Below are positions 8,991 through 16,725 of a stretch of 64,000 nucleotides of DNA, one piece after another (position 1 is the stretch's first letter; the number at the start of each line of letters is the position of its first letter). This stretch comes from Macrostomum lignano. Lineage: Eukaryota. The notes under the pieces are model-generated. The model saw only the letters and a list, made by a program, of their open reading frames with translations. It was not told the DNA's origin and made no database searches. Position numbers and translations under genes: made by a program. The stretch covers positions 585,008-649,007 of the forward strand of contig NIVC01000042.1 in NCBI GenBank assembly GCA_002269645.1. The letters run 5' to 3'.

Positions 8991-9977
8991 TCATTGCTCG
9001 TCTTCCTTATGAGAGCTGGATCGATGCCTTTGCCGCTCCGTGCCCACAACTAACAAATCGGACCAAGAGCGCAGAGTCCTGTCACCGACTAGAACAAGAA
9101 AAGCGGCCAATAGGTTCGGTGGCACGGTGTCCGATGCTATTGCACCTCTGGCTCCTTGCAGCGCGCTCATATACTGATCTCGACAGAGTGTCATCGATCC
9201 AGAGGAGTTCCTCCGTTTGTCAAAGTTAAACAACAATGGCACCTTCATACAGTCCATTTGCATGAGAAGCACCGAGCAGAGCAGTCGGCTCGTGCGGCCA
9301 TTACCATCTCTGTACGGATGAATGAGTAGGAAGCGCTCTAGAAACACGGCAGCTAGTTTGAAAGCGTCTCCGCGGTTGCGAGTTGTCATTGATTGCTCTG
9401 AGCAGTAGTTGAACAGCACCTCTAATTCGGCAGGTATCTGCTCCCAATTCAAGTACTGAAAGGTTGAGTCGCGTGGCGCGGCATCGCATGTACGAAAATT
9501 CCCAGCGTCTTGAGCGTTCGGCATCACCAACTTGTGAACGCGATGCGCCAGGTTAACATCGAATGATACTTCGATTTTCGAGCGCAAATCCACGCCGAAT
9601 AGGGTCTGGAGAGCTCGCTGGAGACTTTCAATTTCTGCCAAATCGTTCGCGTCACACTGCTCAGCTTCACTAGGCATCAGGAACGCGTCGTCAATCGTGA
9701 CAGATTGACCACCGGAAAACGAACGAACTTCGTGCAGTGCATAAAGTCTGGCCACATTTTCAATTGAGTTCTGCCCGGAATCGCTAAGACAGCGCCGATA
9801 TTCAATACTGGTAGATTCCATTTCATCCGGCGATGCTAATAGCACCGTGTTTTCCAAGTACTCAAAATTGCCTAGCAATTCTTTTATTGTTTCGTCAGGT
9901 AGTAGAAGCGGGTCCAGACGATGGTCAAAGGTCACGGCCAAATGGTCCAGCTTTCGCAATTCCAGCTGCCGGGACAT
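8991..9977 (-). CDS. Fic (Fido) domain protein, putative AMPylase (Fic-1), 328 aa, single coding exon
   Basis: Motif HPYRDGNGRTSR (His220, 9320-9318) preceded by a HKLVM..AGNFRT flap region; no TM or TPR as in FICD; splice acceptor TTTCAG 7 nt upstream of the ATG. Confidence 0.92.
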   Translation of the reverse strand: MSRQLELRKLDHLAVTFDHRLDPLLLPDETIKELLGNFEYLENTVLLASPDEMESTSIEYRRCLSDSGQNSIENVARLYALHEVRSFSGGQSVTIDDAFLMPSEAEQCDANDLAEIESLQRALQTLFGVDLRSKIEVSFDVNLAHRVHKLVMPNAQDAGNFRTCDAAPRDSTFQYLNWEQIPAELEVLFNYCSEQSMTTRNRGDAFKLAAVFLERFLLIHPYRDGNGRTSRLLCSVLLMQMDCMKVPLLFNFDKRRNSSGSMTLCRDQYMSALQGARGAIASDTVPPNLLAAFLVLVGDRTLRSWSDLLVVGTERQRHRSSSHKEDEQ

Positions 9978-11229
9978 CTGGCTGCTGAAATGGATGGAAG
10001 AAACTGTTTAAGATGTTAAAAGACCAAACAAAGACAAAACAATGTACTACTCACTATACGTAATTATATACAAAATTTACTTAACATTACTGAAGTGATG
10101 CATCTATTCTCCAACACTTTCCACCCGAATATAACTGTTAGGATTTTGCTTCTGGCCAATGAAAGAACTTTAGTTTACAATGAAAAGGATTCGATAAGAA
10201 AAATCTTCATCCGATCATTGAATCCCGATTCCCACCTTCGGCTTCTCGAGAGACTTTCTCAACCATTGTAACTTAGCTGGATAAGAAACACCGATTTGAA
10301 CCACAACCAGGGAGAATCATTCGAATGCATGGTCTTGCTTATTTGGTTTCAACAATAAAACACTGAACACTTAGAACAAGATCCAAAAGATTAGAACACA
10401 AAATTAAAATAGCCTGTTAGGGCAATGTACTCGTAGATCCAATTTTACCAAAATGCTACGAGTACAAGGAAGATGACCACAAGATTCCCATTTTTTATAT
10501 AGAGAAGGGATTCTGCTAACATTTTTTGGTCGCTCTGGTGCTAATAGTTCGTATAAGCACAAATGAAATCAAACTAAAAACACTTTGTAGTTCAAACAAC
10601 ATGTAAGGTATATTTAAGTACCGTACGATTTTACTTGATACAAATTTATCAACTACATAATATACTATATATACAATTGAGACAATATTTGACAGTTGTT
10701 GCAACAAAAGCACGGTATACATACTTAAGCCTGCAGTGAGCTTGCAAATCCAGGACAAAATTGTGGAATTTATTGTGAATGTGCATGCACTTTGCCATTA
10801 GCTTGTACTGATGAAAGTATACCAGTAAGTCAATATATATTGAAGGCTAATTCACCAGATAGGAGCCACATCTCCTTTCCTCTTAACTCCTGAGTCGACT
10901 TCATTCATTTTTATAGCAGAAACATTTTTTTTCAATCATGCATTTTCTTTAAATTCCTAGGTAGCGAAACAGCGCTATAGGAAACTCCTGTTTAAAAATA
11001 CTCGACTAAGGTTTATGCTATTTGCATGAATTTTAAACTTATGGCCACTGACATAAAACTGCACACAACAATAGCCAATCAAGTTCTGCGGCCAGAGTAG
11101 TAAATTAAATACCCATGCTTTAAGGGCGTTAATGACAAATCAGGGGCTTCACTGACAAAATAAACGCTGATAATACTGTACATGATACATACAAATTAGC
11201 AACAGACACTTCCAAACAATATAAAAAAA

Positions 11230-14200: not shown

Positions 14201-15886
14201 GATCAAGTGTTGATGTTGGTCTCTTGGACTGATCAAGTGTTGATGTCGGTCTCTTGGACTGATCAAGTGTTGATGTCGGTCTCTTGGACTGATCAAGTGT
14301 TGATGTCGGTCTCTTGGACTGATCAAGTGTTGATGTCGGTCTCTTGGACTGATCAAGTTTTGATGTCGGTCTCTTGGACTAATCGAGTGTTTATGCGAAC
14401 GTAAGTTCTGTGAACGTCTCTTGGACTGATCAAGTGTTGATTTCGGTCTCTTGGACTGATCAAGTGTTGATGTGAATCTCTTGGACTGATCAAGTGTTGA
14501 TGTGGGTCTCTTGGACTGATCAAGTGTTGATGTCGGTCTCTTGGACTGGTCAAGTGTTGATGTCGGTCTCTTGGACTGATCAAGTGTTGATGTCGGTCTC
14601 TTGGACTGATCAAGTGTTGATGTGAATCTCTTGGACTGATCAAGTGTTGATGTGAATCTCTTGGACTGATCAAGTGTTGATGTGGGTCTCTTGGACTGAC
14701 CAAGTGTTGATGTGGGTCTCTTGGACTGATCAAGTGTTGATGTGGGTCTCTTGGACTGACCAAGTGTTGATGTGGGTCTCTTGGACTGATCAAGTGTTGA
14801 TGTGGGTCTCTTGGACTGATCAAGTGTTGATGTCGGTCTCTTGGACTGATCAAGTGTTGATGTGAATCTCTTGGACTGATCAAGTGTTGATGTCGGTCTC
14901 TTGGACTGATCAAGTGTTGATGTGGGTCTCTTGGACTGATCAAGTGTTGATGCGAATCTCTTGGACTGATCAAGTGTTGATGTGGGTCTCTTGGACTGAT
15001 CAAGTGTTGATGTCGGTCTCTTGGACTGATCAAGTGTTGATGTGGGTCTCTTGGACTGATCAAGTGTTGATGTGGGTCTCTTGGACTGATCAAGTGTTGA
15101 TTTCGGTCTCTTGGACTGATCAAGTGTTGATGTGGGTCTCTTGGACTGATCAAGTGTAGGTGTCAGCCTCTTGGATTGGTTAAATGTTAATGACATTCTT
15201 GTTGATGACATGCTGCTCAGGATCAGAAGTTCTCTCATCGTGCCTCAGACGGATGACGACCCGAAAGTTGTCGTTTACAGCCACAACCACAATGGGCGAG
15301 GTGCGAGGGTTTCCGCGGGATTTGCAGTGAGGTCATCTTTCGTGTTGTTATCTTCAAATAAGTAGCTGAAAAAAAGAATGGAGAGTTTTTGCAAGCCAAA
15401 TTTCTCCCCACAAAAAATCAGCTTTGTTTTACGATTTCACATTTAAATCTATAAGGACTGTCGTTTCTGTTCACCGATATTAATGAACTGCTAATTGAAA
15501 AACTATGGTGAATATCATAGGGGAAGTAATCACATACATAGAAAGGGCTGCACAGGCTGCTTTTTTACAATAAAATATCGATAAATGTTTAATGTTTAAT
15601 GTTTAAAAGAAACAAGCACAATTAGTAACTTGATGGAGAAACAGTAATTTACCTGCTCAGATTCTTCAAAAGTCTGTGTGCCTTCCAATTCAGAAATGTT
15701 AGCATCCAAAACAAAGAAGAAGCGATTAACAAACTGAAAATCTGCCCACTCTGAATTGCTTAGGCTAAGGAGTCGCTGTTTCTGTTTGGTAACAATGGCC
15801 TCAATGTCAGGTAGCTGTTTGGAGAAGTCCTCCATAAAGGAGGGCAGAAAAAATGGCCTCTTGATCAAAGACAGTTGTTGGCACAT
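11230..15886 (-). CDS. Fic (Fido) domain protein (Fic-2), predicted two coding exons, 325 aa
   Basis: Catalytic exon 11973-11230 (acceptor CTACAG, no Met) with HPFSDGNGRTAR; upstream exon 15892-15653 (acceptor TTTTCAG, ATG at 15886, donor CAG|GTAAAT), phase 0 to phase 0, ending ..ISELEGTQTFEESEQ. Fic domain certain; the exon join is inferred. Confidence 0.8.
12280..12890 (+). pseudogene. PIF/Harbinger (HARBI1-like) transposase remnant
   Basis: VCGALDGTLVNI, RKGEHSLN, WPGCVNDA, LLGNSIYPC, NAAHRCTRSTVERAIGHLK motifs interrupted by stops and frameshifts. Confidence 0.85.
12930..13150 (-). pseudogene. Myb/SANT-like second ORF remnant of the Harbinger element
   Basis: Frameshifted ILLHEFLERKKILFDSF..KKTSWQEI, convergent with the transposase as is typical of Harbinger elements. 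Confidence 0.5.
13590..15160. repeat. 30-bp minisatellite (TGTTGATGTCGGTCTCTTGGACTGATCAAG) within the Fic-2 intron
   Basis: About 50 head-to-tail units without spacers; produces the repetitive ORFs in the track. Confidence 0.97.
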
Positions 15887-16725
15887 GTGTATCTGAAAAG
15901 AGAGCATTCAGACAACCTTATACCTTACAATGAAACAAAAAGAAAAAAGAAAATTTGTTCTAGAAAAAGCAAAAAAGGAAGTACACCTGTAACAAATCTT
16001 CAACTATTTTAGTACAATTCTATTAAATTTTGAATTTTGAAGATTATCCTTAATTGCCCTGTGAACTTTTATAGCTATACTTTTTTCAGCAAGACTACCA
16101 CCACAATTTCCACCTGCTTCTCTCTTCCTTATAAGGCTAGATATATAAGGTTTTAAAATTGACCAAATTTTGCTACCATAAGTTTGCTCATTGTGAAATT
16201 ATTGACTTACAACTTAACAACGATTTTTTAAAGTATTCTCTATTTTAATATAAAGTCTCAACTCTAACTGAATTAGGATAGAAACTATAAGCATGGGAAG
16301 TTTGTCTGCTTTTTTCTAGTATTGAGCTATACTTAAATTGATTCTAAAGGATCTGCATTGCAATAACTAGCTACTGTGATTGGGTTGGTGGTATTATCCT
16401 AGTACTTTTTAAAGAATTTAAACTTAGGGTCACGTAACTTTTTTACCTTAAGAGCCAGAATATAGTTCCTATTTATGGGCCATGTGAGAAAAAAGAAAAT
16501 AGAGAAAAAAAGAGATAAAAAATAATAAAATAAATAAATAAATAAATAATAAATAAAAGAAAAAGGAAAGTAAAGAATAAAAAATAGAAAGAAGAAACAA
16601 AAGAGGAACAAAGAAAAAAGAAAATAAACAAAAGAGAAAAAAGATAAATAAAAGAGCAAAGTAAAGAGAACAAAAGAAAAGAAATTGAATTTGCCAAAAA
16701 TATAAGTCTATTTTGCCAAAATGTT

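What the first reader, a model, noticed from the sequence alone, without database searches (positions are those of the whole stretch)
8991..15892. Tandem pair of non-FICD Fic/AMPylase genes in an animal genome
Seen: two same-strand genes each carry an intact Fic signature (HPYRDGNGRTSR; HPFSDGNGRTAR). Their predicted lengths are nearly equal (328 and 325 aa), but they are very divergent from each other. Known: animals typically have a single FICD/HYPE with an N-terminal TM helix and TPRs that AMPylates BiP in the ER; these two proteins have neither feature. Inference: a lineage-specific, probably cytosolic AMPylation module of unknown target, from an ancient duplication or horizontal transfer. 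The SELEGTQT segment recalls the SxIEGTQ pattern of bacterial Fic N-termini.
Basis: partly seen in the sequence, partly recalled or inferred. Interest (0 to 1): 0.88.

Follow-up and report, generated by a model that had tools for sequence, protein, structure and literature searches.

The report
Two stand-alone Fic genes in flatworm
A flatworm (Macrostomum lignano) carries two adjacent, transcribed genes for short FICD-like Fic enzymes without the membrane anchor and TPR domain of the usual animal enzyme; they belong to a widespread but unstudied eukaryotic family, and one of them has naturally lost the glutamate that normally keeps such enzymes switched off.

Summary
The window is Macrostomum lignano contig NIVC01000042. 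On the minus strand lie gene 1 (8991-9977, one exon, 328 aa, HPYRDGNGRTSR) and gene 2 (two exons, 15886-15653 and 11973-11230, 325 aa, HPFSDGNGRTAR). Both pass Pfam Fic at about 1e-15.

They are resident animal genes:
- Gene 2 has a 3.7-kb GT-AG intron holding a minisatellite and a Harbinger fragment.
- The pair and its COMM-domain neighbour recur in three assembly copies.
- All ORFs are intact, with dN/dS 0.1-0.34.
- The gene models are transcript-based and start right after AG acceptors.

They are not FICD orthologues and are not lineage-specific. An exhaustive HMM search found 94 cluster representatives below 1e-30, and the hits listed are mostly about 260-320 aa. Named members come from beetles, a chytrid and an amoebozoan. 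M. lignano has a third paralogue. No prokaryotic genome found in a capped scan exceeds about 30% identity.

The family profile aligns with the whole Fic domain of human FICD (4.7e-24). Its near-invariant Glu (129/133) matches FICD E234. Gene 2 keeps this Glu. Gene 1 has Ser, so I predict a de-repressed AMPylase. Targets are unknown.

This is a new variant of a known kind, of moderate interest.

The parts
8991..9977 (-). Gene 1: single-exon CDS, 328 aa plus stop. A stand-alone Fic protein, deposited as a 330-aa 5'-partial model (P0001).
   Evidence: ORF. Pfam Fic 1.4e-15. Annotated transcript-based model. AF2 model pLDDT 80.7, Fic core above 90. Intact in all three assembly copies, dN/dS 0.10-0.30.
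9285..9320 (-). Gene 1 Fic active-site motif HPYRDGNGRTSR (residues 220-231).
   Evidence: Read. The motif span was computed. It is canonical HxFx(D/E)GNGRxxR with Phe replaced by Tyr. HPY also occurs in family members P0004, P0052 and P0058.
9714..9716 (-). Gene 1 codon TCC = Ser88, at the column where the family has the near-invariant inhibitory Glu (equivalent to FICD E234).
   Evidence: MAFFT alignments A2 and A3. hmmalign of 153 family sequences gives Glu in 129 of the 133 that cover the column, and gene 1 is one of 4 exceptions. The helix ends at the aligned position in both AF2 models.
9985..9986 (-). AG 3' splice acceptor 7 nt upstream of the gene 1 ATG. The deposited mRNA model begins immediately after it, so I infer an SL trans-splice site.
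   Evidence: Sequence tttcag|CAGCCAGATG. P0001 and P0204 start with SQM. The annotation pipeline cuts transcripts at mapped trans-splice sites (PMC5730564).
9978..11229 (-). Intergenic spacer of 1.25 kb between the gene 2 stop and the gene 1 start, same strand.
   Evidence: It is 95-98% identical to the spacer in copies L086 and L087.
11230..11973 (-). Gene 2 exon 2 (residues 79-325 plus stop), carrying the Fic core.
   Evidence: Matches deposited protein PAA92674.1 / P0002 at 100%.
11548..11583 (-). Gene 2 Fic active-site motif HPFSDGNGRTAR (residues 209-220).
11974..15652 (-). Gene 2 intron, GT..AG, 3679 nt.
   Evidence: Donor gcag|gtaaat and acceptor tctacag|GCC read. The phase-0 join reproduces P0002. 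The homologous intron is 5.6 kb in L086 and L087.
12563..12871 (+). Harbinger-type transposase fragment (DDE_Tnp_4) inside the intron. Not part of the gene.
   Evidence: Pfam PF13359 at 7.8e-12.
13662..15175 (.). 30-bp minisatellite, about 50 copies, inside the intron.
   Evidence: TRF, 94-97% matches.
15653..15886 (-). Gene 2 exon 1 (residues 1-78: MCQQLSLIKRPFF...ISELEGTQTFEESEQ). It holds the conserved N-terminal RPxF motif and the inhibitory helix.
   Evidence: The N-terminal residues of the AF2 model have pLDDT 95-97. Aligns with the family N-terminus.
15689..15691 (-). Gene 2 codon GAA = Glu66, equivalent to the inhibitory and deAMPylation glutamate E234 of FICD. Glu68, in ELEG, is the alternative register.
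   Evidence: HMMER family profile against human FICD, vgEkni / AIEGNT. hhalign against Timema FICD. Column statistics.
15893..15894 (-). AG acceptor 6 nt upstream of the gene 2 ATG. I infer an SL trans-splice site.
   Evidence: Sequence ctcttttcag|ATACACATG. The model of sister copy P0205 begins IHMCQQ, directly after this AG.

Best explanation
These are two functional, transcribed paralogues in the flatworm Macrostomum lignano. They encode stand-alone 'class II' Fic enzymes. Each is essentially the Fic domain of FICD, with the N-terminal inhibitory helix, the core and the C-terminal helices, but without the membrane anchor and TPR domain. They have no signal peptide, so they probably act in the cytosol or nucleus.

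They belong to a large, patchily distributed and experimentally uncharacterised eukaryotic family of about 260-320 aa. They arose by duplication within the flatworm lineage.

Mechanism (inferred by homology). The His of HxFxDGNGRxxR deprotonates a target Ser/Thr/Tyr hydroxyl, which attacks the alpha-phosphate of ATP held by the Asp, Asn and Arg residues, transferring AMP. Gene 2 keeps the inhibitory glutamate (E66). Like FICD, it should be auto-inhibited for AMPylation and may be able to deAMPylate. Gene 1 has Ser at that position, the natural counterpart of the FICD E234G mutation. It is therefore predicted to be a constitutively active AMPylase that cannot deAMPylate.

The targets are unknown. 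Hsp70-type chaperones are the best guess by analogy only.

Shown here: gene structure, family membership, conservation, and residue equivalences by alignment. Inferred: enzymatic activity, regulation, localisation, trans-splicing and target.
For: Identity and residency:
- The contig is M. lignano NIVC01000042.
- Gene 2 has a GT-AG intron with host repeats.
- The window also holds the animal genes RMC1 and a methyltransferase, plus a COMM-domain gene and a Ty3/gypsy element.
- The order Fic - Fic - COMM is the same in three assembly copies.
- ORFs are intact, with dN/dS 0.10-0.15 for gene 1 and 0.34 for gene 2.
- Gene models derive from RNA-seq and start right after AG acceptors.

Family:
- The exhaustive HMM search gave 94 representatives below 1e-30 and 1269 below 1e-10. 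Most of the 150 listed are 260-320 aa and cover most of the profile, though some are shorter fragments.
- Named members come from Ignelater, Popillia, Geranomyces, Planoprotostelium and a third M. lignano gene.
- NJ bootstrap is 93/100 for the family and 79/100 for the clade of gene 1, gene 2, P0057 and P0003. FICD falls outside.

Relation to FICD:
- The family profile matches human FICD at E 4.7e-24 over profile positions 34-284.
- hhalign against Timema FICD gives probability 98.8%.
- The AF2 model of gene 2 has pLDDT 89.7 and pTM 0.88. Its top Foldseek PDB hits are BT_2513 and FICD.

Glu/Ser.

No TM or signal peptide.

No close prokaryotic or IMG/VR relative was found: at most about 30% identity.
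Against: - No enzymatic, localisation or expression-level data were available. Activity is inferred from motif conservation only.
- The N-terminal third of gene 1 is modelled with only moderate confidence (pLDDT 46-70 for residues 50-110). The Ser-for-Glu assignment therefore rests on alignment plus helix register, not on coordinates.
- In gene 2 the register E66 versus E68 is ambiguous.
- The dN/dS values rest on very few substitutions (6 and 17).
- The NJ tree uses simple distances, and gene 1 sits on a long branch.
- Most family members have Asn rather than Asp/Glu in the motif (114/146). The family's chemistry may therefore not be ordinary AMPylation, although the M. lignano proteins themselves have Asp.
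- I could not check whether M. lignano also has a canonical FICD.
Confidence: 0.7

Rival explanations
1. The flatworm clade was exchanged with a large DNA virus or other mobile element, either as a captured viral gene or as a host gene captured by a virus. The genes might then serve host-virus conflict rather than housekeeping proteostasis.
For: - The closest relative outside M. lignano (P0003, 39% identity to gene 2) lies on a 3.9-kb contig with six intron-less ORFs on both strands. These include a Bcl-2 homologue and a TBP-like ORF, a virus-like layout.
- The best BFVD structural matches of the gene 2 model are WSSV wsv406 (E 9.9e-8) and the Oryctes nudivirus FIC-like protein.
- The patchy distribution across flatworm, beetles, chytrid and amoebozoan fits horizontal spread.
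Against: - The source organism of L002 is unknown, and no viral hallmark gene was found on it.
- The IMG/VR scan found only distant Fic genes, at most about 31% identity.
- The M. lignano genes carry an intron, host repeats and stable synteny in three copies.
- The viral similarity is structural only, at 21% identity.
Confidence: 0.15
2. The proteins are Fic-fold enzymes but do not AMPylate. They might be dedicated deAMPylases, or transfer another group such as UMP, GMP, phosphocholine or phosphate, as some Fic and Doc proteins do.
For: - Most of the family carries Asn at the metal-binding motif position (114/146).
- Glu is nearly invariant (129/133), as expected if deAMPylation, which needs this Glu in FICD, were the main activity.
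- Fic enzymes with other chemistries are among the PDB hits, for example AnkX.
Against: - Both M. lignano proteins have the full canonical HxFxDGNGRxxR motif typical of AMPylases.
- The closest characterised relative by profile is FICD.
- Gene 1 lacks the Glu needed for FICD-type deAMPylation.
Confidence: 0.15
3. They are FICD orthologues whose TM and TPR exons were missed.
For: The profile similarity is highest to FICD.
Against: - Homologues in other genomes are complete proteins of about 260-320 aa starting with Met. They share an N-terminal motif that genes 1 and 2 also have.
- The mRNA models start at AG acceptors 6-7 nt before the ATGs.
- No gene is annotated in the 4 kb upstream.
- None of the minus-strand ORF translations printed for the 10 kb upstream looks by eye like a TPR repeat or an FICD-type N-terminus; they were not run through Pfam or any TM predictor.
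- The Timema FICD sequences fall outside the family in the tree.
Confidence: 0.02
4. Bacterial contamination, or a very recent bacterial transfer.
For: Fic genes are mostly bacterial and often mobile (PMC4454073).
Against: - Spliceosomal intron, eukaryotic transposons, flanking animal genes and three syntenic copies.
- The best prokaryotic match found is 29-30% identity.
Confidence: 0.02
5. One or both genes are decaying duplicates without function. Gene 1 is the candidate, being on a long branch with the Glu lost.
For: - Gene 1 is the most divergent member, about 33% identity to any relative.
- Its N-terminal region is modelled with low confidence.
- It has lost a near-invariant residue.
Against: - The full 328-codon ORF is intact in all three copies, with 4:2 and 3:1 synonymous:nonsynonymous differences (dN/dS 0.10-0.15).
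- The catalytic motif is intact.
- A transcript-based model exists.
Confidence: 0.06

Closest known systems
FICD / HYPE (human) and FIC-1 (C. elegans): ER-resident class II Fic AMPylase/deAMPylase of BiP
   Same: - It is the best profile match in the PDB (E 4.7e-24), aligned across the whole Fic domain from the inhibitory helix to the C-terminal helices.
- hhalign probability is 98.8%, and the fold is shared (Foldseek TM about 0.6).
- It has the same catalytic motif HPFxDGNGRTxR.
- The N-terminal inhibitory Glu sits at the same aligned position, and gene 2 retains it.
   Different: - No TM anchor, no TPR domain and no linker.
- Only about 17-20% identity.
- The genes fall outside FICD in the tree.
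- Predicted to be cytosolic or nuclear rather than ER-luminal.
- Gene 1 has Ser in place of E234.
- There are multiple paralogues per genome instead of a single gene.
BT_2513 (PDB 3CUC) and other bacterial class II Fic proteins (CdFic 4X2C, Dde_2494 4RGL, SoFic)
   Same: - The architecture is a stand-alone Fic domain with an N-terminal inhibitory helix.
- 3CUC is the top Foldseek hit (E 6.5e-8, TMt 0.76) and the best single-sequence PDB hit of gene 2.
   Different: - They are prokaryotic, with 19-20% identity.
- No prokaryotic genome held a relative above about 30% identity.
- The eukaryotic family has its own N-terminal WWRPxY-type motif and a C-terminal YLxCL(R)E motif.
WSSV wsv406 and the Oryctes rhinoceros nudivirus 'FIC protein-like' protein
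   Same: - They are short (about 220-260 aa) stand-alone proteins with a Fic fold.
- They are the best viral structural matches of the gene 2 model.
- wsv406 is reported to bind shrimp BiP and inhibit its ATPase (PMC11738776), an Hsp70-directed activity like that of FICD.
   Different: - They are viral.
- The similarity was shown only at the level of predicted structure (21% and 19% identity), and sequence-level family membership was not tested here.
- The wsv406 paper does not describe it as a Fic protein.
Eukaryotic Fic groups E1-E4 of Khater & Mohanty 2015 (PMC4454073)
   Same: That study already noted several unrelated eukaryotic Fic groups besides metazoan FICD (E3), for example E2 with Dictyostelium, plant and fungal proteins.
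   Different: In that study the metazoan sequences were reported only in the FICD group. I could not establish whether the present family equals E2, because no sequences were available to compare.

Membership tests
Fic/Fido superfamily (Pfam PF02661) | Significant match to the Fic HMM above the gathering score. | tested here: met
   Gene 1 scores 58.3 bits and gene 2 scores 60.1 bits, against a cutoff of 24.
Fic/Fido superfamily (Pfam PF02661) | Active-site motif HxFx(D/E)GN(G/K)RxxR with the catalytic His. | tested here: met
   HPFSDGNGRTAR in gene 2. HPYRDGNGRTSR in gene 1, where Phe is replaced by Tyr, a change also seen in other family members.
Fic/Fido superfamily (Pfam PF02661) | All-helical Fic fold. 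| tested here: met
   AF2 pLDDT is 89.7 and 80.7. Foldseek probability is 1.00 to many solved Fic structures.
Fic/Fido superfamily (Pfam PF02661) | Nucleotidyl (AMP) transfer activity. | not testable with these tools
   Needs an enzyme assay.
Class II Fic (intramolecular N-terminal inhibitory helix, motif (S/T)xxxE(G/N)) | Inhibitory Glu on a helix N-terminal to the Fic core. | tested here: met
   This row is for gene 2. E66 aligns with the family Glu and with FICD E234. The helix of P0002 residues 39-61 ends at this Glu. The S/T at position -4 is Asn or Ile depending on the register, so the motif is only partly canonical.
Class II Fic (intramolecular N-terminal inhibitory helix, motif (S/T)xxxE(G/N)) | Inhibitory Glu present (gene 1). 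| tested here: not met
   Ser88 occupies the Glu column, and Gly90 the alternative register. The fold and helix are retained.
FICD/HYPE orthologue group | N-terminal transmembrane anchor. | tested here: not met
   There is no hydrophobic N-terminal segment.
FICD/HYPE orthologue group | TPR repeats preceding the Fic domain. | tested here: not met
   Pfam finds only Fic. The proteins start about 60 residues before the inhibitory Glu, and homologues are complete at about 260-320 aa.
FICD/HYPE orthologue group | Phylogenetic placement with FICD. | tested here: not met
   The Timema FICD sequences fall outside the family clade, which has 93/100 bootstrap support.
FICD/HYPE orthologue group | BiP as the substrate, in the ER lumen. 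| not testable with these tools
   No experimental data were available.
Stand-alone eukaryotic Fic family defined here (about 260-320 aa) | Full-length match to the family profile, shared N-terminal (W)WRPxY/F-type motif, PGxYR...AxP, and YLxCL(R)E after the Fic motif. | tested here: met
   Both genes score E about 1e-129 to 1e-131, but they were seeds of that profile. Independent support comes from BLAST: E 1e-20 to 1e-39 to non-seed members over 130-270 residues.

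The most novel reading that the evidence does not exclude
The tandem pair is a sub-functionalised 'writer/eraser' unit. In FICD one protein carries out both AMPylation and deAMPylation. Here the two activities would be split between neighbouring genes.

Glu-less gene 1 would be a constitutive cytosolic AMPylase. Glu-bearing gene 2 would be the regulated or deAMPylating partner. The two may be co-transcribed and resolved by SL trans-splicing, and they may act on cytosolic Hsp70-type chaperones.

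More broadly, an unrecognised second family of animal, protist and viral Fic enzymes, possibly including WSSV wsv406, would control Hsp70 chaperones outside the FICD paradigm.
Probability: 0.12. Interest if true: 0.8.

Novelty: new variant of a known kind. Interest (0 to 1): 0.55.

Why it matters
The AMPylation field treats metazoans as having a single Fic enzyme, the ER-anchored FICD (review PMC8097203).

These genes show that some animals also carry several copies of a second family: flatworms here, and beetles by homology. This family is anchor-less and FICD-like, and it is shared with protists and fungi. Nothing is known about it experimentally.

M. lignano is a tractable model with RNAi and transgenesis. 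The natural Glu-to-Ser variant next to a Glu-bearing paralogue offers a ready-made contrast between a de-repressed and an auto-inhibited enzyme. That would make cytosolic Fic signalling in an animal directly testable.

The structural link to WSSV wsv406, a BiP-binding viral protein not recognised as Fic in its paper, suggests a concrete target hypothesis.

Tried and rejected
- Word-indexed homology search with gene 1 alone found only itself. With gene 2 it found a handful of relatives. The family became visible only with the exhaustive HMM search.
- Rfam found nothing in the window.
- The IMG/VR scan and the GTDB prokaryote scan gave only distant Fic genes. I therefore rejected a recent bacterial or phage origin.
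- Single-sequence PDB searches were weak. Only the family profile gave a clear FICD alignment.
- I looked for upstream TM or TPR exons in the 10 kb upstream of gene 2 and saw none among the ORF translations, which I checked by eye only.
- I tried to identify the source of P0003 (SRR23592405). It is not from the Macrostomum cliftonense/hystrix project, and no paper mentions the run.
- Its neighbouring ORFs gave no viral hallmark. The Bcl-2 ORF resembles animal Bcl-xL.
- I searched the literature and one supplement for the M. lignano gene identifiers to obtain expression data, and found nothing.
- I tested the writer/eraser idea in the beetle Popillia. Both of its tandem copies lack the Glu (Asn and Pro), which gives no support for a Glu-plus/Glu-minus pairing rule.

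Full report
**Observation.** The minus strand of the window holds an uninterrupted 328-codon ORF (8991-9977) containing HPYRDGNGRTSR. It also holds a second ORF (11230-12081) containing HPFSDGNGRTAR. Both match Pfam Fic (PF02661) far above the gathering score, at 1.4e-15 and 4e-16.

The second gene is split. An upstream exon ends ...GAGCAG|gtaaat at 15653. The Fic exon begins after tctacag| at 11973. The join is in phase and gives ...FEESEQ|ALCPVSS....

**Where it comes from.** The gene 1 protein is encoded on NIVC01000042.1 of assembly GCA_002269645.1. The gene 2 protein is deposited as BOX15_Mlig021507g1 of Macrostomum lignano. NIVC01 is the Mlig_3_7 assembly (PMC5730564).

The rest of the window is ordinary animal genome:
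- an RMC1 gene in several exons;
- a methyltransferase;
- a FLYWCH fragment;
- a complete Ty3/gypsy polyprotein ORF;
- a COMM-domain gene next to gene 1.

The gene 2 intron is 3.7 kb long. It holds a 30-bp minisatellite of about 50 copies and a Harbinger transposase fragment. Contamination is excluded.

**Are the genes alive?**
- The Mlig_3_7 gene models are cut from RNA-seq assemblies at experimentally mapped trans-splice and poly(A) sites, so a model implies a transcript.
- The gene 1 model starts with SQM, the first full codon after the acceptor tttcag| at 9985/9986, which lies 7 nt before the ATG.
- One sister copy of gene 2 starts IHMCQQ, directly after ctcttttcag| at 15893/15894.
- I read both as spliced-leader trans-splice sites. 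This is an inference; I could not inspect reads. It leaves no room for upstream coding exons.
- M. lignano DV1 is partly duplicated, and the pair occurs three times. The order is the same each time: gene 2 with its intron, about 1.3-1.6 kb of spacer, gene 1, and a COMM-domain gene on the other strand.
- All six ORFs are intact.
- Between copies, gene 1 shows 4 synonymous against 2 nonsynonymous differences, and 3 against 1 (dN/dS 0.10-0.15). Gene 2 shows 8 against 9 (dN/dS 0.34).
- The numbers are small, but they point to constraint, not decay.

**What family?**
- Word-indexed searches found almost nothing.
- An exhaustive HMMER search used a four-sequence profile against 1.84 billion representatives. 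It returned 94 proteins below 1e-30 and 1269 below 1e-10. Most of the best 150 are about 260-320 aa and cover most of the profile; some are shorter fragments.
- Most come from unnamed metagenome or SRA contigs. Named members are a third M. lignano gene (P0057, 259 aa), the beetles Ignelater luminosus and Popillia japonica, the chytrid Geranomyces michiganensis and the amoebozoan Planoprotostelium fungivorum. These lie on contigs of 270-940 kb.
- In Ignelater the gene sits between arginyl-tRNA synthetase, an LRR gene and UfSP2.
- The family shares an N-terminal (W)WRPxY/F motif, PGxYR...AxP, the Fic motif (mostly HPFSNGNGRxxR) and YLxCL(R)E.
- In an NJ tree the family separates from bacterial Fic and from insect FICD (bootstrap 93/100). 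Gene 1, gene 2, P0057 and an unidentified relative P0003 form a clade (79/100).
- Gene 1 is the long branch, at about 33% identity to anything and 32% to gene 2 over 184 residues.

The module is therefore not lineage-specific. The duplication that produced the pair probably is.

**Origin.**
- A scan of one genome for each of 185,579 prokaryotic species found nothing better than 29-30% identity over 150-190 residues.
- IMG/VR gave the same picture.
- An earlier survey had already noted several independent eukaryotic Fic groups, but placed metazoan sequences only with FICD (PMC4454073).
- A review states that most metazoans have a single fic gene (PMC8097203).

**Relation to FICD.**
- The 69-sequence family profile finds human FICD as the best solved structure (E 4.7e-24). 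It is aligned from profile position 34 to 284 against the whole Fic domain. The family's "vgEkni" lies on FICD's "AIEGNT", that is, on E234.
- hhalign against Timema FICD gives 98.8% probability with the same register.
- The AlphaFold model of gene 2 is confident (pLDDT 89.7, pTM 0.88).
- Its best PDB matches are the Bacteroides class II Fic BT_2513 and many FICD entries (TM about 0.6).
- Neither protein has an N-terminal hydrophobic stretch or any domain other than Fic.

In short, they work like the catalytic half of FICD, but they are not FICD orthologues. Three defining FICD features were tested and not met: the anchor, the TPR repeats and the phylogenetic placement.

**The inhibitory glutamate.** hmmalign of 153 family sequences shows Glu in 129 of the 133 that cover the column. 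Gene 2 has E66, the first E of SELEG.

Gene 1 has Ser88 in that column and Gly90 in the alternative register. It therefore lacks the Glu under either alignment. In both AF2 models the long helix ends at the aligned position. The N-terminal part of the gene 1 model is only moderately confident.

From established Fic biochemistry (my own knowledge, consistent with the E234G, E274G and E73G mutant structures among the hits), removing this Glu de-represses AMPylation. In FICD it also abolishes deAMPylation. I therefore predict that gene 1 is a constitutively active AMPylase and that gene 2 is an auto-inhibited, possibly bifunctional enzyme. This is inference. No assay exists.

**Targets.** Nothing here identifies a target. 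Hsp70 chaperones are the obvious guess from FICD and FIC-1.

One lead is that the best viral structural match of the gene 2 model is WSSV wsv406 (Foldseek E 9.9e-8). That protein is reported to bind shrimp BiP and inhibit its ATPase, in a paper that never mentions Fic or AMPylation (PMC11738776). I could not test whether wsv406 belongs to this family by sequence.

**Rivals.**
- Viral or mobile exchange (about 0.15). P0003, the nearest relative outside M. lignano, sits on a compact intron-less contig beside a Bcl-2 homologue and a TBP-like ORF. The organism is unknown and no viral hallmark was found.
- A different chemistry (about 0.15). Most of the family has Asn at the metal-binding motif position (114/146), but the M. 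lignano proteins have the canonical Asp.
- FICD with missed exons, contamination or recent bacterial transfer (about 0.02 each), and pseudogenes (about 0.06). All of these are contradicted by the evidence above.

A writer/eraser split of FICD's two activities between the neighbours remains possible but unsupported. In Popillia the two tandem copies both lack the Glu.

**Verdict.** This is a real, well-supported pair of non-FICD Fic genes in an animal. It is a new variant of a known kind: a stand-alone FICD-like Fic family with a natural Glu-less member. It is still contrary to the "one Fic per metazoan" view and is experimentally accessible. Interest is 0.55.

Noticed in passing
not in window; BFVD entry Q77J09 (WSSV wsv406): The predicted structure of WSSV wsv406 is the best viral match to the gene 2 Fic model (E 9.9e-8, TMt 0.69). 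The 2024 paper showing that wsv406 binds BiP and inhibits its ATPase never mentions Fic or AMPylation. wsv406 may be an unrecognised viral Fic enzyme acting on BiP.
   Followed up: partly
L002:1-3894 (Logan SRR23592405): The closest relative of gene 2 outside M. lignano (P0003, 3029-3847) lies on a compact contig. Neighbours are a Bcl-2-like ORF (2316-2816), a TBP-like ORF (449-826) and three further intron-less ORFs on both strands. The layout is virus-like. The organism is unknown and no viral hallmark was found.
   Followed up: partly
L168:10001-10801, 14780-15675 and 20430-20801 (Popillia japonica JASPKY010000193.1): The Japanese beetle has at least two tandem genes of the same family. Both lack the inhibitory Glu (Asn and Pro at that position). 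A downstream 719-aa gene model is reported with a weak Fic hit plus PH and IRS domains.
   Followed up: partly
family alignment: In 114 of 146 family members the Fic motif reads HPFxNGNGRxxR, with Asn where Fic enzymes normally have the metal-binding Asp/Glu. The M. lignano clade and about 30 others keep Asp. The consequence for catalysis is unknown.
   Followed up: no
window 13662-15175: A 30-bp minisatellite of about 50 copies (94-97% matches) lies in the gene 2 intron and creates long spurious ORFs on both strands. The intron is 3.7 kb here but 5.6 kb in the two other assembly copies.
   Followed up: partly
window 12563-12871 (+): A Harbinger/PIF-type transposase fragment (DDE_Tnp_4, 7.8e-12) lies inside the gene 2 intron.
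   Followed up: partly
window 1336-5112 (+): An uninterrupted 1258-aa Ty3/gypsy-type polyprotein ORF (protease, RT, RNase H, integrase) lies within the span of the neighbouring COMM-domain gene. That gene spans more than 7.7 kb here, against 3.9-4.3 kb in the other two copies. This suggests a recent insertion specific to this copy.
   Followed up: partly
window 30401-35898 (+): RMC1 (regulator of MON1-CCZ1) exons: N-terminal domain at 30401-30895 and C-terminal domain at 35368-35898. They are interrupted by a long CT/GT-rich microsatellite (about 31.9-32.9 kb) that creates spurious CLSV-repeat ORFs.
   Followed up: partly
window 39170-39769 (+); 24751-25308 (-): A single-exon class I SAM-methyltransferase ORF (Methyltransf_11, 2.3e-19) and an ORF with a FLYWCH zinc finger, which is probably transposon-derived.
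   Followed up: no
L004:1-20864 (ENA ERZ25039529 contig_50301, 264 kb): A family member (P0055) lies in a gene-dense 264-kb metagenome contig. Almost all of its ORFs have no Pfam hit apart from two RING-finger genes. The contig could be an AT-rich protist or a giant virus, and was not identified.
   Followed up: no
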